A DNA stretch of 64,000 nt, taken from the NCBI GenBank assembly GCA_907165135.1, contig OU015569.1, positions 8,618,001 through 8,682,000 on the forward strand. The letters are read 5' to 3'. Below the pieces are notes generated by a model. It did no database searches. It was not told the origin of the DNA and saw nothing but the letters and a program-made list of their open reading frames with translations. This document shows, one piece after another, positions 9,047 to 45,269 of the stretch; within the stretch, counting starts at the first letter, position 1; each line of letters opens with the position of its first letter. The DNA is from Oikopleura dioica. Lineage: Eukaryota; Animalia; Chordata. A program made the translations under genes and the position numbers.

Positions 9047-12136
<3,090 letters not shown>

Positions 12137-12274
12137 GAAATTATTCTTGAAATATAAGCAATTCAGGGAAAGTGTGATTCGAAACTTCCATATTTCATAA
12201 TTATGTTTAACATAATTAATATAAATCAAACTTAAGCTCAAATCAAATAAAAGCTCAAAATAAGTTCTTGCAGG

Positions 12275-15200
12275 TCAGAAAATTGTTGTTGGATTTTTTT
12301 TCAGATGTGCTGTTTTTTCATGCTCTTCGAGGTCTCCAAGGGAGTTTCCAACAGTGTTGTGGCGAGTATGTCGACGACGAGAGGTGGTTTCATCCTTTAA
12401 CTTGCATGACGAAGGGCGAAATCCGAGGCTCATTGTTGATAATTGCACGCTAGAGTTTAAAATCTTAATTTGAAGAGGAAAAAAAAGACTCACCCGTCGA
12501 GTTCATCAAAAGAGGGCCTTGTGAATCCCTCCAGGTTTGATTTCTGGCTAGTCTTGTGCTCGAGGCCTCGTTTAACGGAAGTTCCTCTGCTCAAACCGGG
12601 CAGCGCACTTCTTATTGACGAAAGTCGTGAATTTTTGTCAACCCTTTTGGAGCCTTTACGCGTACTCCCAGTGAGCTCTTTGTCTTTCTTGACATCGAGT
12701 ATTCCTGCATGGAGCTGGTCTATTTGATAAAGAATTTCCGGCTTGAGCTGGATCAAATGCGTCTGCATAGAGACATGGCAGCAGCCAACTTGCGTTAGTG
12801 TTTTCATCAACTCGTCTTTTATCGGCTTGAGCTGACTGGCGCAAGAACTCGAGATTTTCAGTTCACAAAGAACTCGCAGTAGTTCAGGGCGCTGGACAAG
12901 TTTAATGGTTGAACACTTTTCGACAATGTCTAGCAGACATTTCCAGCCACTGACGTTTTGTATGTTCAGAAGTTTCTTGAAAAAAATATCCACGATCTTG
13001 ATCAGACCGAATTCAATAATCTCCATTTGATATCCGTAAAAGATAACTTTTACGCCAAGTAAAATTTCCTGAAGTCTCCTATCCATGTCTGACGAGTGTT
13101 GGCTTCCATTGTGTGTACTTTTTCGGTCCGTTAACAATTTAGCTCTAGTATTATTTATGTATTATTTATGCTCTTATATTATTAATTATGACATTCAAAA
13201 AGGGACCTTTCCTCAAGTAAAAAGATGCTTGCGAATCATTAAGGCGTTCAAGCGCGGTAGAAAGATAAAATTCCAATGAGAACTCGAGATTCGCTTTCGA
13301 AATAGATGATCTATAAGACTTATTCTTCTTTTTGAATAGGATTGGCGTCAGAAAAAATGAAATGAATTGATTTTTGGAGTTGCTGTTCTGCGACCTTGAA
13401 GCTTCATAATATCGTTGGAAAGAGACAGAGTTTTGCAGGGACTGGAGCTCCGGGTGAGTGCGAAAGCCATCGTCCACCACAACAAGAAAATCGATAATCT
13501 CCAGCTTGAGTTCTTTTGGACTCGTCTCACTACCTGATCGAAAAGGCATCTGACTCATTACTCCATCTTGAAAGGTCCTTTGAATCTGGTAATTGTCCAG
13601 AAGAATGATGAGCAAATGTTCAATAATATTAAAAATACTCTGCATTCCGAGAAGAACACTTTTTCTGGCCATCAGCAGTCTCATTCCCTTTATGACCTCG
13701 AGAAAAGGCCTCCAAATAAGCTTCCGTCTCAGCCCAGGCTTTGTTGTGATTCGACCGAGTAATTTTTCAAATTTCTTGAGAAAGATTGTCAATCCCGCAC
13801 GCATCTCTTTCACTCGCCAGTCCAGTTGCGGGAACATTACAGAGAAGTAGTCGCTCAAGGTTTCCGAGAACTGCCGATAGGTCTGTTTCTGCATATTTCG
13901 TTTGACGTTCTTCTCTATTTCATCTATTGGAGTCTTCAATAGAGAAAAAACTATTTCCAAAAGTTTCTCGTTGAACTTTTTTGAAAAGTTTTCGTCGTCA
14001 AATTTAGTCGAGATAGTTACATCTTTTGAGACCTTGTAAATCTTGAGAACAACCTGCAGATAGGTTTGACGGGGGAGGACACATTCAGTGCAGGCGTTGA
14101 ATTCGACTGACTCGCTGGATTCATCGTCGAGTTCGTCACTGGTCACGCGGTTACCACGTTTGGACATAGTCGTTCTGGACTGAAAACATTGCGATTGCAG
14201 CGCGATATTTTCCACGACTTCGGTCACTTTCTTCAGCTTGGTGAAAAGCAAAAGAGATACCTTGGAGAACTTCTTGAGCTGCTGCCTCACCTCATAAAGC
14301 TCGATATCAACGAGAATGTCCAAGAGTAGGAACATTTTTGTGATAGATGTCTTGTCGCTCCATTCAAGAATTAAAATTTGACAGAGATTTAAGGCGTCGA
14401 ATATTTGAAAATTTTCTGATTCAGAAAGGTAGATAGTGTCCAGCGTTTTTGTCGAGACTTTGTCGAGAAAGTAGCATTCTCCACATGTAGAGCTGGCATT
14501 TATAGAGTTGATCAGAGATGCAAGAATTTCCGGTGTTAGCTGTTCCTTCGTTGTCAGATCAGCTTCATTCTGGTTCAATTACGCTTTATTATCTTTGATC
14601 AGTTAAATGATGTAAAGAACCGAATCATTAAACAGGTCCGCGAAAGCTGATAAAAGCTGCATAACGAATGGTACTCTGTGAATGCGATACAAATGTTTGC
14701 ACAGAAACTCAATAGCGTTTCTTGTTGTTTTAGAGTGATACCGTAAGATGTAGATTCTTATTACGGAATCTAAGATATGAAGTCTGCAAAATTCTAGGAA
14801 TTTTTCCGGGAAACGAATCGACGCGGAAACGAGGGATGTGATGAACTTCTTCAGAACGAAAAGATTTTCGTGATGGGTTATAAACGCGCAGCATAGGATG
14901 TCCAGAAACGATACAAGCTCCATTTCCCAGTTGAGAGGATCAATATTTTCGAAGACATTTGAAATAAGATCCATCCAGAAAAACTTTTTCATGCTGTCTA
15001 GTTGTTCGGAGATCCGATCACTCGAACCTGAACCCATTACACGCCGAGGAAACATCGCCATCCGAAGCAACTCAGATTTCAAGAAGAGAGCTTCGGACTC
15101 TTTGTCTCCCGATGATGTTATTATTTCGTTGATTAAAACTACTTTCGCGATCTCATCGTTGAACTGGTTTACAGCGAGCGAGTTGATATCTTTCTCAGCC

Positions 15201-18200
15201 CGAGCTTTTGCAACTTCAACGATGGTAACCTGTGGAATTTCTCCTTTTTTGAAGATGAAGTAATCCCTAACATACGTGTTTGGGTTGAGAAGCCTGTTTT
15301 TCGATCGATCCTGGAGACAGAGAACATTCCCAGGTGATGCTGTTAGCGAATAAAACTCGATGCCTTCTTCAAGAATATCAATAAACTTGACATCAGAGCC
15401 CACGTCGATCTGATTTGGGATCATATGATCGTACGGCCCAAAACAGGTAAGCTTCTTTGCCCCGTAGACAACGGAGAATAATGATATCTTGCAGTTTTCT
15501 TTTTTAAACGTTGCTTTCAACTGCTTGAGTGTTACCCCTTCAATATTCGGGAGTACCAATTGGAGTATTAATATGAGTTGTTCCATTCGATGTCGCTCAA
15601 GCTCATCGCCGTTGCGAGTAATCATGGTCATGAGCCCAACAACGTAGTTTGCGATCGTCTTTGTTGTTTGAGCGCTTAGATTCCATGAGTCTTTCGATCC
15701 GCCAATTGCAAGAACAAGATCATAGATTTTTGATACTGGTTCAGCGCTCGTCTGCGTTCTTGATATAATCTTTTCCGTTACCGATCGAAGGAGGAGAAAA
15801 CAATCTTCAGTTAAGAACTTTTTAAATAGATCTTTTGCAATTAAGTTCACCGGGATATTTTTGTGGAGTTCGGGAGAATCTACCAGATAGAAGAGTTTTG
15901 GCAAAATATTTTGCAATGCCGTTGGGAAAACTTGACTGGGAACGTCGTCCTTGAAATGATAGGATCTATCAAAATTATCGTTGTTGATATCATTTCCGCT
16001 GTCTGTCAGGTTGTTTTCGTCCACCATCGTTCCCATCGAGGTGATTGACATAAGTCTGGAGCTAAATCGCCGCGATCCCTCTTCTTCGTCATCCATAGAC
16101 CCAACTGAGCGATAGTAGTGTTGATTTATAGAATCCTGAATGGACAAATTCGTCAATGAATACTTCTGCCGCTTGTTTTGCTTCTCCTCTTGTTCCTTTT
16201 TGAAAGTTTTTTCTTGTTCGCTTTTCTTTGTAGAAGACGGATTCGACTTAAGAAGATCAGCGTTGAGGATCCCTTCAGCATACATTTTTTCGAAATCGTT
16301 GTATTCGTTCATCCACGGCGCATCTGGCGCTTCCTCCGGATAGTCACCAAGCGGTGGGTTCGGCAACGCTATATTTACTGCTAAGCTTGGTAGTTTAAAA
16401 TGACGGGCTACTCGCTTATCAACATGAGACCAAACATGCGATCTCATATTCCAGAGAATCTCCATCTTCTCGAGCAATTCTGCGGGTGGGTCTTTTTCCA
16501 AGCAAAGTTTCAAAAAGGCTGGTATGGTTTCTTTTAGTCTATGGCAGGCGAGAAGAATGAAAACGGCAGCAAGCTTAGATGCCTTATCGTTGCGAAGCGT
16601 GATTATTTTCCAACACGGATAGATGGCAAACTGCATCGTCGCGTTCGATATTTCGTGGATAGATTCCACTAAAACGCTTAAACAAGCAACAGGAACTTTT
16701 TCTATTATTTGGTGAGCTTCTTGTACAATGGCCTTCTTGTTTCCGGCAAAGCAGTCGATTTTGTCTAAGTAATTATCGCTTAGAAGAAGCAATATGAGTG
16801 AGCCGAGCGTTTCGGTCACTTGTCTCGTCGCAACATAGCAGTTCATAAAGCATTCTCCGTTTTTGTGGTCACAATCGAAGCTGAAGTCCGACAAGAAATG
16901 ACCCATCAAGTTAATGTAACTTTGAGATGGTCCTTTCGGAGTATGATCGAGAGAAGATCCACGAAGGCTCTTCAAATTAAGAGATTTTCGATTGGGTTCC
17001 GAATGCTCGTTCAGGTCGGCGGAAGGGTTAGATATGATGTTCGAATTTAATTCAATTGGAAGATCTTTGTCTTTAAATCCCCAGCGAGAGAAAAACTGCT
17101 TCATTCCGAGTGCACCGTGAGTATAAAGAATATCAAGCTTGTTTTTTGCATGCCTTGATCCTCCCAAAGAATCGTTATCCTCATCTTGATTCTTGTAATG
17201 CGGCCCGTGTCTACCGCGACGTTTTGGTAAATGCAGCTGTGCTTTTTTACACTTTGCCTTTGACGCTTGTAAATTCGCCTCTCGAATAAACGCCACTAAT
17301 TCCGAAAGCAGTATGAGCCCAAAGTTACGAATCCATCTTTTCGAAGCAACCTTATCGATTTCTTTATTTGTGAGGAAGGTAGACACCGTTGGCATCGAGA
17401 TTTTTTTCTGGTCATCAGCGATTGGTTCCTCTAAGATAGAAGTAATCTTCTCTGCCCAGTTTTGAAATTGATTCTTGAGCTCCAATCTTGTTTCTTCGCT
17501 ATGAGCTTGGTGAAAGCCAGAATTCTCGCTTTGATAGGTGCGTTGCAAGCATATGAGATTCTGGCGAACATATTGGGTCAGTTCAACAAGTGTGACCACT
17601 CTAACAAAGACAGGCGCGTCCATGTTGAATATCTGCGCGATGAAATTTCCATCAGGTAAAGAATTCGCATTCATAAGCCCTAGAACTGTCCTAAGAATAC
17701 CAATGCCTTCGCAAATTTTTTCCAAATCTAGTTTCAGCGCATCTGACGAGTGAATGGGCACTAAGTGGGGGTATTTATTTTGATCGATCTACATATGCTT
17801 AAAATAATTGACCCGATACGAATGGAATAGGTTCATTGATCTCATTAGACGAAATGGGAAGACCGAGATGAGCTGGACGACGTGTGGCATTTAGCGTGCT
17901 GTATTTATTTCGAATAAGATCTTCTTCTGTCATCCGTCTGTTGAATGCTTTCAATGTGAAACTTTATCCAAGACTTGATAATCATTTACAATTGAAAGCC
18001 TCTCCTTGAACTACTGAATACATTAAACTTAGACTTTTTAATCGATAAGAATTTTTGGTTGTCTCTCACTTCTGGAGCCTTTTCATTATCATCTGACTTC
18101 GTATTTTGCACCATCTCAGTAAGTCTTCTTATCATCGAGCGCCCAACTCCCGCTTTGCAGTCTGACGGATTGCGGCTTTTTGATTCGGCTGCATCGTCAT

Positions 18201-20510
18201 TGGCGTTTCGTGAGCTTGAACAATCTGACGGAGAATGACCCGCGGGTCTGCTTGAATCTTGCTTCTTCAAAGATAGATCTCTGATCTGGCGAATCTTTTT
18301 TATTCTTATTGCGTCTTTCTTGCCTTGGATCAAAATATCAAAGAATATCTCACAGAAAACTTTTGGATGTTGATAACGGATGTAATTGATGAGACTGCCA
18401 GGAGTGTGCAAACTGTTTTTCCCGATTTCGTTGAACTTTTCGCCGATCTTCAAAATTACATCCCTCATATGGGTCCTCAAGAACGCATGCTGAACGCGAT
18501 TAAGCTTGTGATTTTTCACATTGTCAAAGTTTCGGCAGGTTTCGAGAACTTTATGAAGCATTTTTAGAATCCACTCGATCGGTCTTGACTTTATCAAGCG
18601 CTTCAAAACCTGCTCAGACTCGCCTTCGCACTCATGAATAATGTGATCAAGCTTCTCTAGCAGAATTCCACGGAATGGGTTCAAATTTGTTGCATTCTTT
18701 TGTCGCTCGCAGTTGCACGGCAATTTCATCAACAAAATCAACCCAAGTTCGATAAGATTCTCCAAGTCGGAATTGTGATGCTCGACTTGTTCAAAAAGCC
18801 AGCAGTACAAACCGACAGCAGTTTCAATTAACTGCATGTTCGGTTGCAAGTCAGCGAAATTCTGCATGAAGTAGCTCAGGAGCATGTCGAGCTTCGGCAA
18901 ATTTGTCCTATCAAGAAATATAAAGGCGAAGTTTTTTTCATAAAGACCGGACTCAGTTGTGTATTTGACAGACGAGTCTGAGAGCCACTTTCTCTGCTCT
19001 ATTCGATTGTCGTCTTTGACGCCATTTTTCTTGTAGAGCAACATCGAGTGAATGACTAGCGACTCATCACCAGCTGGATCAATGATTGAAAATCTAGTTG
19101 CTTGGCTGTGTCCTTTTCCAGAGGGCACCAAGTGCCGTGAGCCAATTCTATTCAAATTGCGCACGTTTTGTGACATTCGTCTGACCGATCTCCGCAAGCT
19201 CTGTCGAATACTCGTTTGTCTTGAATGCATACGCTTTAACGAAACGGTCGTCCATCTTCTATGCGCGGTAAGTGAACGTGGCGAACAATGTTTCGTTGTT
19301 AGTCGAGAGCTCCTTCCACTTTCGCGATAAGAGGCTTCCGGAGAGGGACTTTCCGTCGCCAAGTTTTTGAAACTTTCAACTAGCCAAGGCGTCGAGATTT
19401 GTGCTATTAAACACTGTGACATCGGACTAGCTGAGATTGATTGTTTTTTCATTTTCTGGCGGACGTGTTTGTTCTTTTCCTCATCTTCAGAGTTCGATCG
19501 TGGAACTGTTATCGAGACTGCCCGTCTTTGAAGGGGCTCAGATTTTATAAGCCGCGTCGTGTCTCCTTCAGGATGCTGTCCAAATATCGAAGATAGACGT
19601 TTACGCAAGTATGAAAAGCACCAAAGACGACTTTCCGGGCATTTAACGAGTTTTCTGAACAATTATTTAACAAGCTTCAATAGGGAATATTTTCTGACCT
19701 ATCAATCGATTGCAAAACTGCGGCGTCGAGGCACGACAAAGGTGAGTTAATTCCTCTGCTCATCGTTTGGCGTACTCGGTCGATTTCCATGAAAGGTCGG
19801 TTGAATACTGCCAGGTCTGGCATATTTGCTTTCGAAAGGGAGCCCCAAAACGAAATTTGAATCTAAGTTAGTTTCTCATAAAAAGAACTTTAATCTTACA
19901 CACCTGATCTGAAAGGACCATTCGCAAAAAACTTTCAGAAGCATTTAGCTTACTAAAAAATGGTGAGAACTGGACAACAAAAAGTTGCAACGTAGCCAAA
20001 GGCAAGCGAATACCATCGTCGCCGGAGAGAATGACGGTCATTGTTTTGACGAGTTCTGTTTCTGCCTCCGTCAATGCAACCATTTGTCCGTCATTATTCT
20101 GACGATGTTTGAATGTATACGAGAGAGTAGTGAAAACATATGGCAGGGCTGTTTGGAGGAATTGTTCGCGGCTGTAGAATGTTAGCGCCGCCGTCAATGA
20201 TGGTGGGAGTCCTTTAACATTCGTTTCAGAAAGAACTTTCTTGAGAGAGGCACAAGCAGCATCTGTTTGACTGTTGAATTTATCCAATATAAATGGCGTT
20301 ATCTAAAGTTGGAAATGTACAACGAGTAGTCAATTTGCGTCCGTATTTTAACGATTATGAGACGTGATACTAGGCTATGAAATCCTGGATATTTTTTGGA
20401 ACCTGAGAGGTGAGGTATTTGTGAATATCTCTGGCATTCGCCGCTTCCTGGTCAGTTTCAGAAGCACTTATCTCAGAAGATGCGATACTCTTGAAAAAGG
20501 GGTTTCTCAT
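12275..20510 (-). CDS. unc80: UNC-80 (NALCN channel complex subunit), ~9 exons including the 558-, 1052-, 470- and 215-aa ORFs
   Basis: N-terminal VPKNIQDFI...DAACASLKKVLSE..KGLPPSLTAAL...TALPYV...AETELVKTM parallels UNC80 IPLPIQTFL...EASCVSFERVLVE..HGLSPALSEAI...AALPHV...AETKLLHTL. Internal FKLPSLAVNIALPNPPLG and NPNTYVRDYFIFKK match recalled UNC80 motifs. The last intron 12450-12493 (44 nt) is in phase. Confidence 0.85.
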
Positions 20511-35775: not shown

Positions 35776-37054
35776 GTCATATCATATGGCCGACATTGTT
35801 CGCGATAAGAATTCAGTCAAATTATCCTTTCTTTAGTGGAAGAAGAGTCAGCCATCGAACAAAATTCCGCGATTTTAGAGGAGCCATCTACCACATACGA
35901 GGTGCTTCAATAATTTCAAATAAACAATAAAAAATACAATAGTCCATCTATGTGCGAATCACGCGAGGAAAGAAAAAAATCAACTAATCGAATATCGACA
36001 TGACAAGAAAGTAATATTCTCAATAAATTGTTCGTAAACAGAAAGTGGTTGTTGATCAAATGTGTTTAAAAAATTCGCGGCAAAAAAAAATATTTGAGGG
36101 CGCACGGGAGTGTATCTCTCCGCCACCCGCTTCGAGACATGCGTGCGCACTTTCAACCCTTGCCTGAAGAGAGTGGGACATGGAGTCGATTTTTGCGCAA
36201 ACATGAAATTGATTTTCTCGTTTTCGCTACTACTGAGTTCTTTGAACTTGAGCAGAGGAACAACTCTTCCGGGGAATAGAGATTTAAAGAAAAAGATCGC
36301 CTTTCTGCCTCTGCTGAGTGAAAGGATAAAAAGATTTCCTCAAAAGTCACTTTGGTTATTAGACGAATTTAAAATAAAATTGCAACATTTTTCATCCTGC
36401 GAGAAGAGAACGGGCTAAACATGGAGCCAACTTCTCAACAATGGGAATGGACGGGCGGCCTGGGAAAATCGTGCAGGACGAGTTCTTGATAAGCTCCTGG
36501 GGCAGCCACGAGATCTCTTTTTTCATCGATTTCAAAAACGACAGCATAAACATGACAAAAGACGACCAGCAAAACGCTTTCCTTACGTAAGTCTGGGGGC
36601 AAAAAGGTTGATTCAATTGTTGTTTTAGCGCCTTCAAAGTTTGGGAAGAGCAAACTTCGCTCAAATTCCGCCAAAGTGCGAAGAAAGACGCTCAGGATCG
36701 AGGCTGAGATATTTTCTTTAAATTCTCCCTGCCCGTCAAAATTTGGGATGATCAAGTATCGGTTGTACTTAGCTTAAATTATCGATTGCTGGCACGCGCC
36801 ATATTGCGTTTAATCCAACTCACAGTGTGAGGCATATTTTCAATGTTCACTTTCCGGAACTCTCTTTGACCGTTCGCCAGTTAGATTTTTTTGGCCGAGT
36901 CAATTAACGGTTCAAAATTTTCATGAACAGTGTTTATTTTTTTCACTCAAGGAAATCAGCAATTTTAATTCGAACGGAATGACATTATAAAGATAGACAG
37001 CAGATCGAAGAACGACCTTTCAGCCTTGTTAAGATCAAAGTAAGCTTTCGCAAG

Positions 37055-37310
37055 TGAAGGGATCCTAGCTTCTGCTGAATCTCCCACTTCTAGCGTAGTT
37101 TGCCTGCTCTCTATATCTGGACGAGTGAAGAAAACGAGTAAAGTATCTTTGACGTCTGTATTTCGAGCTGGAGTAAAATAGAGGTTAATTCACGAACTGC
37201 GTGAATTACCGAATGAAGAGAAATACACGGCGGCGACCGAGCAAAGCTCGATCTAGATAAGCAAGTGACCTTAGGGGACGAGGGAGTCTAACGAATCTAA
37301 GATCCCAATA
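37055..37310 (-). repeat. 3' LTR (256 bp)
   Basis: tgaagggatcc...gatcccaata, identical by eye to 43285-43540. Contains a perfect 9-bp-stem hairpin taattcacg-aactg-cgtgaatta (37186-37208). Confidence 0.95.
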
Positions 37311-37523
37311 CCCCCCATGAGACTGAAACGTCCTCTAAGGCCAAAGTGTGTGATTTTTGCAGGAGTATAAGCGTAAGATGAGTAACATGGCAGGTTCGAA
37401 ACGTCGAGGCAGTCTGATTCGCGTTAAAAAACCCTTTTTTGGGAAAAAGCTTGAATCAGATGCGAAGTTTTCGTGATGTCCGAGCGGTGATGACATGAAG
37501 GAGTAGCTGCACATGTAGAAGAA

Positions 37524-37566
37524 CTCAAAATACGTCGGCGACGGTAAACTGTGATAATTTCCGTAC
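37524..37566 (-). other. Candidate 43-nt GT-AG mini-intron / splice module downstream of pol
   Basis: Minus strand reads ggcctgaaaag|GTacggaaattatcacagtttaccgtcgccgacgtattttgAG|ttc. Confidence 0.55.
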
Positions 37567-37619
37567 CTTTTCAGGCCCCGGTCGATGAATAGGGGACCTG
37601 AGTGGGGCAGTACTTGCGC

Positions 37620-40600
37620 TTAGTCGTATGACTGACCCGAGTTTGTGCCGATGTTTAGAGGTTCGACGGGCCTCGTTTCACGGTGTGCTCGTTTTGTATG
37701 TTTCGGGAGATGAGCTGCTCCAACTTCGGTTAAAGTCGCATTCGGATCGGCGCCGGCTGAGTATTGACGATCTGGTGAAGACTTTGGACGGGTTCTTTTC
37801 TTGCTGTTTTCAGTTGCTGAGCCCTCAACTACTGTTGAATTATGTTTATCGACTGACATATGGCTATTGTCGGGCGCAGCAACCTCCGAAATCACTGTAG
37901 CATCAGCTGACATGTCCTCGGCAGTTTCATAAAGAGTACCACCAGAGTACCAGCGATCTGACGGCTCGGCTGGAGCTACCGACGAGTCCAAAATAGATGT
38001 AGCGGTTGTATCTCCCAGATTTTCCATGTCCAATCGGCGTCTACTTTCCAAAATAGGTGATAGAGATGATCTTGGCGGTTTTTCCATAGCAACCATCGGA
38101 GTCGACGCGACCTGAGAAGATTTCCTCCCCCCATGCGACTTCGACCCGGACTTTTCCATCGGTTTGGAAGTAGGAACAGGCGATTTTTGTGGGACTTTCG
38201 ACTTAACGATTTCGGTTAAATGTGGGAATACGTACTCGGCCTCGTAGTAATCAATCCAGCGTAAGTCGTGATTTCGTTCTGCGGCGTGAACCACGTGTTC
38301 TCGATGGATGAAATCACGTTGTCCTTTTTTATCTTCGACCATGACGACCCAGTCGTTGCTCGAAACGGCTTTCAGGGGACCTACCCAGCGTTCCTTCTTG
38401 CTTTTAGCGTCGGTCAGGTTTTCTCGCTTAATGTACACGACAGCGCCAGCGGGGATTGGTCTCGGCTTAGGCTCGTTTTTCAGCCTGTGCTCCATGGCTC
38501 GGTCAGCAGCTTCCATCGCAGTTTTCACAATGGCTTCCGCCGATTTCGCTAAAGCTCCCACATTGAGACCAAACACCTGAGGTGTTTCCGCTGTCATTTC
38601 TGCGCCAGTAGAGTGGGTGAAAGTACTTTTTCGGCCAAACCAAACTTCTCGCGGTGAAATTTTCGTGCTTTTGTTTTTCACACTATTGAGCGCGCGCATC
38701 ACGTGGGGAACGCAGTCGGCCCAAGTTTTTCGACCGGAAGATGAGTTGACCATGCAGAATAGACTGTTTTTGATAGTCCGATTCGCTCTTTCTGCGAAAG
38801 CGTTTGATTGAGGGTGAAATGCGGTACTTATTGTATGTTTTATCTGGTTAAGCTTACACATTTCGTCAATCACGCTTGCGCAGAAGTGGGTACCTCTGTC
38901 ACTGTGTAGATGTTTCGGCAAGAAATCCATGGGAAGGAAGACCTTGTAGATGAGCGCTTTTGCAGCGCAGATAGCAGTGTCGGACCGCGTCGGAATGCAC
39001 CAAGTGTAGCGAGAGAAAGTGTCCGCCACCACCAAATAATACTTGAATCCGCCAGCGGGAGGCATACAAGCGAAATCGATCTGAATCGATTCGCCAGCTG
39101 TTTTTCCACGACGAAGGGTTCCAAGTGGCGGTTTGGTACGAGTTCCAGCAGATCCTTTTCTGCGTAGGCAAGGGACGCAGCTGTGGACGTAGTTAGAAAC
39201 ATCGTCTTGAAATGAAGGCCACCAAACGTCCTCTAATCGCTCTAAAGTCCGCGGCTCGCCCAGATGACCGGACAAGTCGTGAGCTAGAAAGAGAAAGTGA
39301 CTTTTTACCGCTTCCGGTACCACCGCCCGCGCGCCAGATTTGAATTGACACATCAAGCACCCGGTAGTGTTATCCAGGAACAGAGCTTTTTCCATCTTGA
39401 GTAGAGACGATTGTCGGTGGTCGGAGTCCTTCACCAGCGATTTTATGTCCAGTGGCTCCTTACCAGATTCCAGAAAAGTGATGATTGCACTCAGAGCAGA
39501 GTCCTCCCTTTGATAGTCCAGAATGTTATTATAATTCGCTGACACCAACGGAATCTCCATTGGCGCCGCGATAGCCTTGACGTTTACCTTATGTATCTTC
39601 ACCTCTGATAAAGTGATTTTCTCCGGAAACTGATTTTCGTTCCAGAAAGGGACGAAGACACGTACTGGTGAATTCTTGTCGATTTCGTACTCGCGACCAA
39701 CGGGAAACTCAGAGTCGTATCCAAGTGATTTGTCGTCCTCGCCAGGTCTGCGGCTCATAAAATCGGCGAATTGATTTTCTGATCCCTTGATGTAGACAAT
39801 GTGAAAATCGAATTCTTCCAATCGGCTTTGCCATCGGCTTATTTTAGAATTCTTGAACTTCTTTTTGTGTAGGAAGATCAAAGATCTGTGGTCTGTGTGA
39901 ATCTGAAAGAATCTACCTTTCAGGAGCTTTTCCAGTCGCTCGCAGCACCAGACAATGCTAAACATTTCCTTTTCTGAAGTGTTCCATTTTCTTTCAGCTT
40001 TGTTGAAGGTGTGGGAAATCGCGCTTACTAGGTGCACTCTCCCGCCATACTCTTGTAGCAGAACACCACCCGCTGCGTACAGGCTCGCGTCTGTGTAGAG
40101 GTGAAAAGACTCGTCAAAGTTAGGAAAGCTTATGACAGGAGTCTCGGAGAGTCGTCGTTGAATTTCCTTGAGCGCCAAATCCGCTTCTTTGGTCCACTTG
40201 AAACAATTTGTTTCGTTCGCCGAATTTCGAACATCGTTTATGGGCTTCATTCTGCTCGAGAAGCAACCGGATGAAATAGCTTCGCCCATTTTCGTTTCTA
40301 GAAAACCTCGGATCCAATTCAATGACCCGATTAATGAAGCTAACTCCTTTTGGGAGCGTGGGGGTTTCATCTGACGAAGAGCGGAGACTTGCGCAGGGTC
40401 CGGTTTGATTCCATCTTCGTTGATGATTCGGCCCAAAAAGTGAGCTTCGGATTGTAGGAAAGAGCACTTTTCGCCCTTGAGTTTAGCGTTAAACTTGCGG
40501 AGCGCGATGAATAGGTTTCGGAGAGTGTTGTAATAGCAGCTGAAAGTCTTCCCAAAACACACTATGTCATCGATATAAGAAAGCATCTTTTTCCTGGTGG

Positions 40601-42773
40601 GGCTTGAGTCGAGAATTGTGTTTACGACGCGCGAGAATATATTCCCCGAGCATCGATAACCGAATGGTAGTCTGCAGAAGGCGTAAGATTTCCCACCCCA
40701 CTGGAAGGAAGTCTTGTACCTGTCGCTTTTCTTTACAGGGCACTGCCAATATCCACTTCGTAGATCAACTGTGGCGAAAAACTTATTGCCCGGTCCAATG
40801 TTCGCAATCGTATCCTCCATGCTTGGGAGATGGTAAGGGTCGGATTTGTCGGAGAGGCATTTGTTCAGGCTGTTTTTGTAGTTGATGCAGAAGCGCATTT
40901 CCCCAGATTTCTTAGGAATAGGCAATACCGGGCTGTTAAACCCTTTCTGGTCTTTGATCTCTTCTATTATTTTCGTTTCGAGCAGTTCGGAGATGTGATC
41001 GCTGACCTGACCATGAAAAGCTTGCGGAATCGGGTGTTGACTGATGTTTCGACTCGTACCATCAGTCGGGATTTCGATCTCGAACGGGAATTCACCCATT
41101 TTTTGACCGTCGCAGCCGAATCTGTCGTCGAATTCCAAACACAGCTCGGCGACCACCTTCTTTTGCCCCGGGTCGGCGTTTGCTGGTAGGGTAATTCCGA
41201 GTTTTTGCTTCGCTAGCTGAATGGGGCACCTGGCTGCGTTCTTGTTAGGTGCGTCCAGCTTTGGGACTTTTGGTGGCGGTTGAGTGCGGGATCGATCGCT
41301 ATCCTTGACCGCTGATCTAGTAGTCAAGTATTTCTTGATTTTGGTCCGCTTCACTCCGTCCAGCTTCACCACTTGAGTCTCAGTTTGTGTGAAGGCTTCG
41401 TTGTAGCAAAATGAGAGAGTACGATTCTTATTGTCGACTGTGAAGCTGTCCGTCATCGCATTCTCTAGTATATCGCGGCCCAGTAGACTTGGGTATTTAC
41501 TGCCTGGCATAATGGTGAGATTCAGGGAGAATGCAGGGCCACCATTGAATGATAAGCGGCAGGGAAGGATACCCATCGGCTGCTCGGCGGGAATATTTGG
41601 GCTGAAACCGGTGACCTTGAAGGGACAGGGCTTCAGCATCTGGAGAAATTCGTCGGGAACGTAAGCAGCGGACAGACAGGAGGACTCGGCTCCGCTGTCG
41701 ACTTCCATCGATACGTCAAAACTTTTAGAGCCCGTAATGATGGTAGCCGAAGCGAAATAAGCCTTTCCTGGTCGCTTCTTCTTCACTGTGTAAAAGTGAA
41801 CGTCGAATGGTTGGAAATCTTCAACGTTCTTAGTCGTATTTATCTTCTTGGATTCTGGTTGTTTATCGTCTTTCCCATCCTTAGAATCGTTGCTGGCGCG
41901 CTTAGCATTCTTCTTCTTTTTGTTCTTATTTCTGTTGAAGTGCTGGGAGACGGTCGCGCTGTCAACTCGATTCTGTCTTGTGGATTGGGCGAGACGGCAG
42001 AGTTCGTTGATATCGTAAACTTTTGATAGGCTTGGAAGGATTGCGTTGAAAACGTCTGGTTCTTCTTTCCTAAGATTCAAGTACAGCATCATCGTCGAGA
42101 ATATGTCAAATATTTCATCGACCCCGGCGTCGGCTGACTTCTCTTGTCGGTAAGAGTTCAAAGTCGCTTGCTTCGCCTCGTTCATCTTTTGCAAGACGTT
42201 GGCGGTGTAGTGTGCAAACGGCTTCGAATGGTCGTATTCGACGTCGAAAACTTCGCTTAGCTTCAGTAAGTAGTGACTCTTCGCGGCGAATGATTTCTCT
42301 AGCAGCGCCTTGGCCGATTTCCAGTCTTGACAATTCAGAAATTCGGTTCCAAGTGAGCGTTCGATGTTCAAGTCGAAGTGGCTGTACACTGCTGCGATGA
42401 AAGGCTGTTCACGTGAAGGTCTGTCGCGGACGTAGGCGCGGTGATAAATGTCGGCTCTGCCCAAGAAGGTGTTGAAAGATGTGTTGCATGCGGCGTCCAG
42501 CTTCGGCAAGTCTTGGACGTGACGAGACCAGGTAGTGGCCACCCATGCTTCTTCTCTCATTGTCGCATTCGTAGAGTCTTTTCCTTGATCGAGCTCGCAG
42601 GTAAGAAGCGTTGTACTGAGCTGTTCTAATTTTACTCTGCTTTCTGTGATCAAGGGCTCTAGGCTTGGCTTTAGTGATTCGTCATTTCGCACTTGTTCTT
42701 CGAGGTAGTTTACTCGATCGTTTATGCTTCTTATTTCGGTGACGGTTTCTAGCAGTGATTTGTTCGCCGCCAT
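37620..42773 (-). CDS. Gag-Pol polyprotein (gag, aspartic protease, reverse transcriptase, RNase H, integrase)
   Basis: Protease VDSGA; RT DLRSGYWQ, LPFG and YIDD; RNase H YTDAS and TDHRSL; integrase HDLSGH...CVPC zinc finger and DDE core (QIDF, HSDRG, AER). Single frame, no stop or frameshift. Confidence 0.97.
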   Translation of the reverse strand: MAANKSLLETVTEIRSINDRVNYLEEQVRNDESLKPSLEPLITESRVKLEQLSTTLLTCELDQGKDSTNATMREEAWVATTWSRHVQDLPKLDAACNTSFNTFLGRADIYHRAYVRDRPSREQPFIAAVYSHFDLNIERSLGTEFLNCQDWKSAKALLEKSFAAKSHYLLKLSEVFDVEYDHSKPFAHYTANVLQKMNEAKQATLNSYRQEKSADAGVDEIFDIFSTMMLYLNLRKEEPDVFNAILPSLSKVYDINELCRLAQSTRQNRVDSATVSQHFNRNKNKKKKNAKRASNDSKDGKDDKQPESKKINTTKNVEDFQPFDVHFYTVKKKRPGKAYFASATIITGSKSFDVSMEVDSGAESSCLSAAYVPDEFLQMLKPCPFKVTGFSPNIPAEQPMGILPCRLSFNGGPAFSLNLTIMPGSKYPSLLGRDILENAMTDSFTVDNKNRTLSFCYNEAFTQTETQVVKLDGVKRTKIKKYLTTRSAVKDSDRSRTQPPPKVPKLDAPNKNAARCPIQLAKQKLGITLPANADPGQKKVVAELCLEFDDRFGCDGQKMGEFPFEIEIPTDGTSRNISQHPIPQAFHGQVSDHISELLETKIIEEIKDQKGFNSPVLPIPKKSGEMRFCINYKNSLNKCLSDKSDPYHLPSMEDTIANIGPGNKFFATVDLRSGYWQCPVKKSDRYKTSFQWGGKSYAFCRLPFGYRCSGNIFSRVVNTILDSSPTRKKMLSYIDDIVCFGKTFSCYYNTLRNLFIALRKFNAKLKGEKCSFLQSEAHFLGRIINEDGIKPDPAQVSALRQMKPPRSQKELASLIGSLNWIRGFLETKMGEAISSGCFSSRMKPINDVRNSANETNCFKWTKEADLALKEIQRRLSETPVISFPNFDESFHLYTDASLYAAGGVLLQEYGGRVHLVSAISHTFNKAERKWNTSEKEMFSIVWCCERLEKLLKGRFFQIHTDHRSLIFLHKKKFKNSKISRWQSRLEEFDFHIVYIKGSENQFADFMSRRPGEDDKSLGYDSEFPVGREYEIDKNSPVRVFVPFWNENQFPEKITLSEVKIHKVNVKAIAAPMEIPLVSANYNNILDYQREDSALSAIITFLESGKEPLDIKSLVKDSDHRQSSLLKMEKALFLDNTTGCLMCQFKSGARAVVPEAVKSHFLFLAHDLSGHLGEPRTLERLEDVWWPSFQDDVSNYVHSCVPCLRRKGSAGTRTKPPLGTLRRGKTAGESIQIDFACMPPAGGFKYYLVVADTFSRYTWCIPTRSDTAICAAKALIYKVFLPMDFLPKHLHSDRGTHFCASVIDEMCKLNQIKHTISTAFHPQSNAFAERANRTIKNSLFCMVNSSSGRKTWADCVPHVMRALNSVKNKSTKISPREVWFGRKSTFTHSTGAEMTAETPQVFGLNVGALAKSAEAIVKTAMEAADRAMEHRLKNEPKPRPIPAGAVVYIKRENLTDAKSKKERWVGPLKAVSSNDWVVMVEDKKGQRDFIHREHVVHAAERNHDLRWIDYYEAEYVFPHLTEIVKSKVPQKSPVPTSKPMEKSGSKSHGGRKSSQVASTPMVAMEKPPRSSLSPILESRRRLDMENLGDTTATSILDSSVAPAEPSDRWYSGGTLYETAEDMSADATVISEVAAPDNSHMSVDKHNSTVVEGSATENSKKRTRPKSSPDRQYSAGADPNATLTEVGAAHLPKHTKRAHRETRPVEPLNIGTNSGQSYD

Positions 42774-42775
42774 AG

Positions 42776-42818
42776 CTCGAAATATATCGGCAGTAAGGGT
42801 TTATGGGCCTTGGATTAC
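42776..42818 (-). other. Candidate 43-nt GT-AG mini-intron / splice module immediately upstream of the gag ATG
   Basis: Minus strand reads ggcctgaaag|GTaatccaaggcccataaacccttactgccgatatatttcgAG|ctATG. Confidence 0.6.
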
Positions 42819-43269
42819 CTTTCAGGCCCTCAGAAAATACTGCGACTAAAAGTCGCAATATGATGAGCTGAGGTGCCTTTTGCGCAAACGCCCGACGATT
42901 TCTCTGTCCAGCGATTGTCGAAATTTCAAGGTCTGGTCCAAGGGTCGATTCTTCGTAAACTTCTCTCGATTTTTGGTGAAAAGTGGCGAAAGAATTATGT
43001 TTTTCTCAGTATTTTAGGTTTTCCCCGGCGTGCGTGCGTGGTTGCGTGGGCGCGACTTTCGGCGCGTGGGTCGTGGTGGCGCTCGTGCGGTGGCGCTCGC
43101 TCGGGGTGGTGTTGGTGTGGTGCGGAAAATTCTCTGAGTGGAGTTTCTCCGGCGGCGCGGTGGCGGTTGGTGATTCGGTTCCCCTCGACTCCGCTGACGG
43201 CCAATCAGCGTCCAAGTTGCGAAACTTCGGTTGTCGATGGCGGAAAAATTTATCTTTTCTCCAACGGGA

Positions 43270-43283
43270 CTACTCTGACACCA
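43270..43283 (-). promoter_or_regulatory. Primer-binding site, probably tRNA-Leu
   Basis: TGGTGTCAGAGTAG lies 1 nt inside the 5' LTR. It is complementary to the CCA end and resembles tRNA-Leu-type PBSs (TGGTGTCAG(A/G)AGTG). Confidence 0.75.
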
Positions 43284-43284
43284 C

Positions 43285-43540
43285 TGAAGGGATCCTAGCT
43301 TCTGCTGAATCTCCCACTTCTAGCGTAGTTTGCCTGCTCTCTATATCTGGACGAGTGAAGAAAACGAGTAAAGTATCTTTGACGTCTGTATTTCGAGCTG
43401 GAGTAAAATAGAGGTTAATTCACGAACTGCGTGAATTACCGAATGAAGAGAAATACACGGCGGCGACCGAGCAAAGCTCGATCTAGATAAGCAAGTGACC
43501 TTAGGGGACGAGGGAGTCTAACGAATCTAAGATCCCAATA
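43285..43540 (-). repeat. 5' LTR (256 bp)
   Basis: Identical to 37055-37310 and adjacent to the PBS. Confidence 0.95.
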
Positions 43541-45269
43541 CAAGGGTGCCCATGGGGATGATTTTGACTTCGACGGCCGTGGACACACTCTGGCGCATGC
43601 ATTCTACCCTGGCCAGAAAGGACGCTCGGGCCAAGTACACTTGGACGCTGACGAGAACTGGTCCCTCTACGGCTATCATGTCGGCGAGACCTCCTTATTG
43701 ATGGTTACGCTTCATGAAATCGGCCACGCACTTGGCAAGTTTATTTTTACCGAGTGCTTATATAACAATGACTTTAAGAATTTGGACTCATTCGAGTTCG
43801 TTTTCTTATGAAAATATGATATAAATTTTGCCTCATTTGTTTTGACGAGCTGTTTTTGTCTCTTTCAAATCTAAAATTGAAGTTCTTTTAGGCTGCTAGA
43901 CAGCACAGTTCAGTCTGAACATTTTCTTGCGAAAGTATGATATAAGACTTGGCTCATTTGTTTTGATGGGCTGTTTTCATGATTCGAATTTATTTTTACC
44001 GAAATTTAACCGTCCTTTAGGGCTCGGACACTCTCTCGATCCAGACTCCGTTATGCGTCCTATCTATAAGGGATATTCATGGGCTAATCTCAAGCTTGGC
44101 GCGAAGGATATTGATGGAGTCGAAAAATTATACGGCGAGGATCCGAGCAAGTTCAAAAATGACGGAATCTTTAACTCCCGCCGTGCTTTCGAAGGTAAGA
44201 CCAGATTATATTCATTTCATTACTGTAATGATAGACATTATTCTTATATTTTTACTCAAGCAATTTTATCCAGATTGTCTAGCGTTTTTCCATCGTAAGT
44301 GTTCAAAGTTCAGTTTTCCAGGTGGAAAACTTGGCATAGAAAATATGCTCCGTGAGGATTGCAAAGATCTGGTTTAACAGTTTCCGTGGGAGATAACATG
44401 GCCTAGGAATCGCGAGATTTCTAATTATGGAAATAACATTCTAAACTTAGACGTTGACATCTGTGGCGTCGTCTGGGATGCAGTGCTCACTTGTCGAGGG
44501 GAAACTTTTTTCTTCTCTGACAGACGAATGTGGAGATTGAGTCCGACTGGTCATTTCGTTCCTCCTCTGGCCATGAAGATTCACGAGTTCTGGGACGGTT
44601 TTCCTCATAATAAACCCGTCGATGCTGCTTACGAGCGATCGACAGACGGAGCACTGATATTCTTCTCCGATGCAAAAGTTTATAAGGAAATGTTAGACGC
44701 GCTTTTCTCCGCGGGGACTGTTTCCGAAGGAACCAAACTTTTAGCATCTGAAAGTTCCACGGGGCAATGATAAACGAGTCTTCTCCGGCGACGATCGCTG
44801 AGTTTTTCAATCTTCCGCCTGAAATCGCCGTCCCAAAGAAGATTGACGCCGGTACGATAATTCTGGTTTTATTGATGTTTTATTAGCCCTTTCCGTTCAG
44901 CTATTCATTGGAAGATGGAGCAGCTGACTTTTCTCTTCTTCAGGAGCTCCTTTTGGAAAATAGGAACGGATCAAAATTGAATTTATCGCCGACAACAAAG
45001 TCGAGTTAGACAAGAATCAAGTCGTTTTGAACTGAATACAGACGAGTTTAATGTGGAAAAGCCGCAGCTATTGCAGATCGGAAAACTATCTGAGTCGATT
45101 TGGAAAGAGCTTCCGTCGAATATGGACGCGGCATTTGTCGACTCTTTGGAAGTGACCCATTTTATCAAGAGACGCAAGACCTGGGAATTCAACAAGATAG
45201 AACTCAAGTAAGTACTCGTTTCCTTGCACTTTCTCGCATAAAAAGGGGTAGCCTGCCTTTTCTCCTATC

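What the first reader, a model, noticed from the sequence alone, without database searches (positions are those of the whole stretch)
37524..42818. Twin 43-nt host-type GT-AG modules bracket the gag-pol ORF
On the element sense strand, ggcctgaaag|GTaatc...ttactgccgatatatttcgAG (42818-42776) ends 2 nt before the gag ATG. A second module, ggcctgaaaag|GTacgg...ttaccgtcgccgacgtattttgAG (37566-37524), starts 54 nt after the pol stop. Both are exactly 43 nt, the typical host intron size in this window, and share the upstream exon word and the 3' end pattern. A retroelement should lose any constitutively spliced intron, so retention implies regulated splicing or selection. Possible roles (inference): spliced RNA for translation versus unspliced RNA for packaging; or 5' donor to 3' acceptor splicing that deletes all of gag-pol, like a retroviral env message, giving a short sub-genomic or parasitic RNA that keeps the PBS, leader and PPT.
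Basis: partly seen in the sequence, partly recalled or inferred. Interest (0 to 1): 0.8.

Follow-up and report, generated by a model that had tools for sequence, protein, structure and literature searches.

The report
Look-alike mini-introns flanking a retrotransposon gene
Two similar 43-base stretches with intron-like ends sit at either border of the single gene of an intact jumping element in a tunicate-type genome, but only one of their four splice signals is of host quality, so they are probably not working introns and the question stays open until RNA data or relatives are examined.

Summary
The literal observation holds. On the minus strand, 42818..42776 and 37566..37524 are each 43 nt and run GT...AG. 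The first ends 2 nt before the ORF's ATG; the second starts 54 nt after its stop. They sit inside an intact, very young Ty3/gypsy-type LTR retrotransposon (identical 257-nt LTRs, 4-bp target duplication, one unbroken 1717-codon gag-pol ORF) in an animal genome whose closest named gene relatives are tunicates. Host introns in the window have a median length of 42 nt, so the size fits. The two modules are each other's best match among 6,514 GT...AG segments of that size in the window, so the resemblance is probably real. A search of the two untranslated regions without that framing is not significant. As introns they are poor: only the 5' donor is host-grade, both acceptors have G at -3 with weak pyrimidine tracts, and GC is 0.44 against 0.27 in host introns. 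The 779 nt upstream of the gag ATG form the longest ATG-free run in the window, so unspliced RNA is translatable. The 59-codon ORF after the 3' module has no relatives. Splicing could not be tested. Fetching relatives' DNA was left out and referred.

The parts
43285..43541 (-). 5' LTR (257-nt identical repeat; the outermost base may belong to the target duplication)
   Evidence: the repeat finder D1, 100% identity; read
37055..37311 (-). 3' LTR
   Evidence: the repeat finder D1; read
43541..43544 (-). Target-site duplication, upstream copy (4 bp, CTTG); the downstream copy is 37051-37054
   Evidence: read
43266..43283 (-). Primer-binding-site-like stretch starting TGG, one base after the 5' LTR
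   Evidence: position read; no tRNA in the window to match it against
42774..43284 (-). 511-nt leader, ATG-free; part of a 779-nt ATG-free run (43552..42774), the longest in the window
42776..42818 (-). 5' module, 43 nt GT...AG; donor 6.4 bits (host-grade), acceptor 0.0 bits with G at -3; shared upstream word at 42819-42829
37620..42773 (-). gag-pol ORF, 1717 codons plus stop, no stops or frameshifts (0 breaks)
   Evidence: 52% identical over its length to P0121, 1722 aa
41460..41702 (-). Aspartyl protease region (weak Pfam match, below cut-off)
39810..40919 (-). Reverse transcriptase and RNase H domains
38811..39320 (-). Integrase zinc-binding and core domains
37524..37566 (-). 3' module, 43 nt GT...AG; donor 0.5 bits, acceptor -1.9 bits with G at -3; shared upstream word at 37567-37578
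37335..37514 (-). 59-codon ORF starting 9 nt after the 3' module; no family match, no relatives
37311..37324 (-). Polypurine-tract word ending in a G-run next to the 3' LTR
   Evidence: read; the repeat finder D12

Best explanation
The window holds an intact, recently inserted Ty3/gypsy-type (Tor-like) LTR retrotransposon in a larvacean-type tunicate genome. Its full-length unspliced RNA most likely serves as both messenger and genome. Ribosomes can scan an ATG-free 5' region, 5' module included, straight to the gag ATG. The two 43-nt stretches are best read as a diverged direct repeat of about 55 nt lying at the two borders of the ORF, not as a pair of host-grade introns. Only the 5' donor resembles a real host splice site. 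By inference, it may act as a retrovirus-style leader donor or U1-binding site, used rarely if at all. Shown: the anatomy, the site scores, the ATG-free run and the reciprocal best match. Inferred: that most RNA stays unspliced at these sites, and any role for the repeat.
For: Identical LTRs and an unbroken ORF with protease, RT, RNase H and integrase in that order. Host intron model: donors score 4.5-11 bits, acceptors 5.0-12.9 bits, none of 19 has G at -3, and mean GC is 0.27. The modules score 6.4/0.0 and 0.5/-1.9 bits, both have G at -3, and both have GC 0.44. They rank 11th and 75th of 294 GT...AG pairs on the element's sense strand. The ATG-free run of 779 nt ends at the gag ATG and is the longest on either strand of the window. 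Identity is concentrated in the upstream exon-side word, while donor positions +4 to +6 differ at all three bases. That is not the pattern expected from selection on a 5' splice site. No significant RNA structure at either module. No Rfam match.
Against: Weak sites are exactly what a retroelement would need in order to keep an intron, so poor scores do not exclude low-level or regulated splicing. The host set is small and was partly chosen by donor type and GC, so the GC and donor contrasts are partly circular; only three introns are homology-defined. The larvacean spliceosome is described as permissive (PMC4122922). The reciprocal best match, the equal length and the positions at the ORF borders suggest constraint of some kind that this reading does not explain.
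Confidence: 0.45

Rival explanations
1. Leader donor to a post-pol acceptor: the donor at 42818 is spliced to the AG at 37524, or to another AG in the 3' UTR, removing gag-pol. This would be a working or relict version of the env-type subgenomic splice. It could yield a short RNA that keeps both ends of the element.
For: In Oikopleura Tor3a the env mRNA is spliced from a donor close to the gag start to an acceptor upstream of env, and some Tor elements lack env (PMC4402516). Cer1 keeps host splice sites for a spliced accessory mRNA (PMC10309623). The donor at 42818 is the only host-grade donor in the leader. No ATG precedes it, so the first ATG of such an RNA would be the one at 37514.
Against: The AG at 37524 scores -1.9 bits, 7th among the AGs of the 3' UTR, and none of them reaches the host range. 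The 59-codon ORF has no family match or relatives. The reading does not explain the 5' acceptor or the 3' donor.
Confidence: 0.22
2. Twin weak introns, the reader's first idea: each 43-nt module is removed from a fraction of transcripts. This would mark those RNAs for export or translation, while unspliced RNA is packaged.
For: Length sits at the host mode. Both modules have GT, a branch-like TTAC 19-22 nt from the end, and AG. They are reciprocal best matches among 6,514 segments. [quoted passage not shown]
Against: Three of four signals fall below the host range, both have G at -3, and the composition is unlike host introns. The leader is already translation-ready without splicing. An intron downstream of the stop codon would normally expose an mRNA to nonsense-mediated decay (general knowledge).
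Confidence: 0.15
3. Pure coincidence: two unrelated stretches that happen to share short words, picked out because GT and AG are frequent.
For: The free local-alignment search is not significant. There are 294 GT...AG pairs of this size on the element's sense strand, several of them scoring better, including one inside the LTR.
Against: The restricted shuffle tests and the real-sequence background.
Confidence: 0.12
4. The AGs are spliced-leader trans-splice acceptors placed just before start codons, as in operon-rich larvacean genomes.
For: Both AGs lie 2 and 9 nt before an ATG. Trans-splicing and operons are documented in Oikopleura (PMC4122922).
Against: Both acceptors are weak by the cis-intron model. 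The host's spliced leader was not available to test.
Confidence: 0.04

Closest known systems
Tor elements of Oikopleura dioica (Ty3/gypsy; Tor3a env mRNA splicing), PMC4402516
   Same: Tunicate host with tiny introns. LTR element with a donor near the gag start and an acceptor region after pol. Some members lack env.
   Different: The Tor3a donor is non-canonical (GA) and serves a real env gene. Here the donor is GT, there is no env, and the element's placement among Tor groups was not tested. No paired modules are reported there.
Cer1 of Caenorhabditis elegans and its spliced cerv mRNA, PMC10309623
   Same: Env-less Ty3/gypsy-type element with fused gag-pol that retains host splice signals in its genomic RNA.
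   Different: Cer1 sites are conventional strong host sites and encode a 517-aa protein from five exons. Here the sites are weak and no accessory protein is evident.
Subgenomic gag RNAs of plant Ty1/copia elements (BARE, EVD), PMC3735527 and PMC5580714
   Same: Alternative splicing balances the translation and replication roles of one transcript. In EVD, U1 binding at the donor also protects the full-length RNA from premature termination.
   Different: A different superfamily and kingdom. The intron lies inside the coding region around the protease, not in the untranslated borders.
Intron gain by reverse splicing plus reverse transcription, proposed for Oikopleura (Denoeud 2010 as summarised in PMC4122922)
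   Same: It would make related short introns at two places in one transcript, and a retroelement RNA is reverse transcribed by nature.
   Different: Reverse splicing copies the intron only. Here the best-kept part is the exon-side word upstream of GT.

Membership tests
Host-type spliceosomal GT-AG intron | GT at the 5' end, AG at the 3' end | tested here: met
   Both modules
Host-type spliceosomal GT-AG intron | Length within the host distribution | tested here: met
   43 nt against a host median of 42, range 36-52
Host-type spliceosomal GT-AG intron | Donor matching the host consensus | tested here: inconclusive
   The 5' module scores 6.4 bits, within the host range. The 3' module scores 0.5 bits, below every host donor
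Host-type spliceosomal GT-AG intron | Pyrimidine tract and a non-G base at -3 of the acceptor | tested here: not met
   0.0 and -1.9 bits against a host range of 5.0-12.9. G at -3 in both modules and in 0 of 19 host introns
Host-type spliceosomal GT-AG intron | AT-rich interior like host introns | tested here: not met
   GC 0.44 against 0.11-0.36. The host set was partly chosen on GC; the three homology-defined introns have GC 0.14-0.28
Host-type spliceosomal GT-AG intron | Removal from RNA at exactly these borders | not testable with these tools
   No transcript data for the host in hand
Host-type spliceosomal GT-AG intron | GT, AG and length kept in relatives while the interior varies | not tested
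   Fetching relatives' DNA was left out and referred
Ty3/gypsy LTR retrotransposon | LTRs, target duplication, a TGG-start primer site next to the 5' LTR, a purine run next to the 3' LTR | tested here: met
   The primer site was not matched to a tRNA
Ty3/gypsy LTR retrotransposon | Domain order protease, RT, RNase H, integrase | tested here: met
   Pfam; relatives carry the same domains
Tor family of Oikopleura | Pol groups with named Tor elements | not tested
   No named Tor protein came back from the word search, and named comparators were not fetched
Retrovirus-style subgenomic splice | Donor in the leader, acceptor after pol, and a downstream gene | tested here: inconclusive
   Donor present. 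Acceptor weak. The downstream ORF of 59 codons has no relatives

The most novel reading that the evidence does not exclude
The two modules are paralogous weak introns kept by selection at both borders of the ORF. One would have arisen from the other on the element's own RNA and been fixed by its own reverse transcription. Partial splicing would sort transcripts between translation and packaging. This would be a retroelement using host-sized introns as a switch in a genome known for rapid intron gain.
Probability: 0.1. Interest if true: 0.75.

Novelty: new member of a known kind. Interest (0 to 1): 0.3.

Why it matters
If the modules were spliced, they would show how a retroelement can keep introns in a host with a permissive spliceosome and fast intron turnover, and they would link retrotransposition to intron gain. 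As things stand, the solid result is more modest: a new, apparently intact Ty3/gypsy element in a compact tunicate-type genome. It has an unusually clean ATG-free 5' region, a single good leader donor, and a short diverged repeat at the ORF borders whose role is unknown.

Tried and rejected
Enumerating all frame-consistent GT...AG candidates between open frames gave mostly noise, so homology-mapped GH9 introns and a filtered set were used instead. RNA folding of both modules was not significant, z -0.9 and -1.5. Rfam found nothing at gathering or relaxed thresholds. The bacterial-type promoter and terminator scan is not informative for this host. No tRNA is present in the window to test the primer site. 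The Gag region has no Pfam match, no PDB sequence match and no CCHC knuckle. A single-sequence structure model had mean pLDDT 49.6, so no fold search was run on it. The 59-codon ORF gave no family match and no relatives. No second copy of the element, LTR or modules exists in the window. The original Tor description (Volff 2004) is not in the paper library. The reverse-splicing origin was judged unlikely because the exon-side word is the best-conserved part.

Full report
What is there. Reading the minus strand confirms every literal statement of the finding. The stretches 42818..42776 and 37566..37524 are each 43 nt and begin GT and end AG. The first stops two bases before the ATG at 42773. 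The second begins at the 54th base after the stop codon at 37622-37620. They lie inside a complete LTR retrotransposon. It has two 257-nt LTRs that are 100% identical, a 4-bp target duplication, a TGG-start primer-site-like stretch one base after the 5' LTR, and a G-run next to the 3' LTR. Its single 1717-codon ORF has no stops or frameshifts. Pfam places protease (weak), reverse transcriptase, RNase H and integrase in that order, the Ty3/gypsy arrangement. No second copy of the element, its LTR or the modules occurs in the window.

Host. Neighbouring genes are animal genes: UNC80 with exons of up to about 1050 codons, a GH9 cellulase and a claudin-like gene. The closest named GH9 proteins are from the tunicates Clavelina and Ciona at 56-59% identity. 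An identical host ORF lies on Tara Oceans plankton metagenome contigs. All sampled introns are GT-AG, so a Fritillaria-type host with mostly non-canonical introns (PMC13326754) is unlikely.

Is 43 nt the host size? Yes. Mapping GH9 relatives onto the host gene gives introns of 43, 40 and 52 nt. A wider set of 19 introns has median 42 nt, range 36-52. For Oikopleura dioica the published peak is 47 bp (PMC4122922).

Is the twin resemblance more than chance? The answer depends on the search space. A free local alignment of the 511-nt leader against the 308-nt 3' UTR is unremarkable: 170 of 2000 and 435 of 1000 shuffles reach the observed score under two scoring schemes. If only GT...AG segments of 36-52 nt are compared, 0 of 1500 shuffles (equal length) and 1 of 400 (any length) reach it. 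Against real sequence, each module's best match among 6,514 such segments on both strands of the window is the other module, 11 against 7 and 6. The identity sits in about 15 columns around the donor, mostly on the exon side (14 of 15), and in the last 16 columns (13 of 16). The middle is near random.

Are they host-type introns? Mostly not. In a position-weight model from the 19 host introns, host donors score 4.5-11 bits and host acceptors 5.0-12.9 bits. The 5' module scores 6.4 and 0.0 bits; the 3' module scores 0.5 and -1.9 bits. Both end in G-A-G, while none of the 19 host introns has G at -3. Their GC is 0.44 against a host mean of 0.27. They rank 11th and 75th among 294 GT...AG pairs of this size on the element's sense strand. 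The donor at 42818 is the only host-grade donor in the whole leader. The AG at 37524 ranks seventh among the AGs of the 3' UTR, none of which reaches the host range. One caveat applies: the 19-intron set was partly chosen on donor type and GC, so those two contrasts are partly circular. The three homology-defined introns agree with the set, and in an unfiltered histogram a 40-44 nt peak shows up only in the low-GC class. Donor positions +4 to +6 differ at all three bases between the modules, while eight exon-side bases are identical. That is not what selection on a 5' splice site would preserve.

What the leader says. There is no ATG on the sense strand in the 5' LTR or the leader. About six would be expected in the leader alone, and a 0.001 fraction of shuffles have none. 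The ATG-free run of 779 nt ending at the gag ATG is the longest on either strand of the 64-kb window. The 3' UTR, by contrast, has four ATGs in 308 nt. So the unspliced 5' region, module included, looks selected for ribosome scanning. This removes the need for a spliced form for translation, although it does not exclude one.

What lies behind the 3' module. A 59-codon ORF starts 9 nt after its AG. It has no Pfam match and no relatives in the word search, so there is no sign of a third gene that a subgenomic RNA would serve.

Relatives. The RT-integrase region finds an unnamed metagenome protein, P0121, of 1722 aa at 63% identity. It is 52% identical over the whole polyprotein and almost the same length, which supports the start codon. 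Pol-only relatives follow at 35-48%. The window's own protein is not in the collection.

Known precedents. In Oikopleura Tor3a the env mRNA is spliced from a donor near the gag start to an acceptor upstream of env. Other Tor groups use an internal promoter, and some members lack env (PMC4402516). Cer1 keeps conventional host splice sites for its spliced cerv mRNA (PMC10309623). BARE and Arabidopsis Ty1/copia elements make spliced subgenomic gag RNAs, and in EVD the U1 snRNP at the donor also protects the full-length RNA (PMC3735527 and PMC5580714). A retained leader donor is therefore ordinary for this kind of element. A pair of look-alike mini-introns at both ORF borders has not been described in the papers I could read.

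Verdict. The anatomy is real and the resemblance is probably not chance, but the evidence does not support two host-type introns. My best reading, at confidence 0.45, is this: an intact young Ty3/gypsy element whose unspliced RNA is both messenger and genome, with one genuine leader donor and a short diverged direct repeat of unknown role at the ORF borders. Leader-to-3'-UTR splicing (0.22) and weak twin introns (0.15) remain open.

Steps left out. It is the comparison that would best test conservation of GT, AG and length. I also left out the joined step of the splice models. No exon-exon junction string was built or searched, and the ORF behind the 3' module was searched on its own by reference.

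Noticed in passing
window 43398-43439 and 37168-37209 (minus strand), inside each LTR: A 42-nt GT...AG stretch scores like a true host intron (14.7 bits summed, host mean 13.1), better than either module. It contains a 23-nt palindrome that folds into a 9-bp hairpin with z -3.3. It could be a transcript-end or regulatory hairpin.
   Followed up: partly
window 38127-38140 versus 37311-37324: The 14-nt word ending in the G-run beside the 3' LTR recurs 13 of 14 inside the ORF's C-terminal part. It looks like a central polypurine tract (family D12).
   Followed up: no
window 42846 (minus strand): The best acceptor-like AG near the gag start (5.4 bits) lies upstream of the 5' donor. It cannot serve the proposed 43-nt intron, but it would be a candidate if the host trans-splices this RNA.
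   Followed up: no
window 41724-42773 (minus strand): The presumed Gag region has no Pfam match, no PDB sequence match and no CCHC zinc knuckle. It is predicted all-helical at low confidence and is conserved in P0121.
   Followed up: partly
window 12490-20287 (minus strand): The host UNC80 gene has exons of up to about 1050 codons separated by gaps of tens of bases. At least two junctions lack an obvious strong GT donor, which hints at non-canonical introns.
   Followed up: partly
window 9047-12190 (plus strand); L001, L002: The host GH9 cellulase gene is closest to tunicate enzymes. An upstream ORF on the same strand, which may belong to the same gene, is identical to sequence on Tara Oceans plankton contigs, which helps to place the host.
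   Followed up: partly
window 42873-43411 (plus strand): Two overlapping antisense ORFs of 141-142 codons cover the leader and part of the 5' LTR. They are probably a by-product of the skewed, T-poor leader composition.
   Followed up: no
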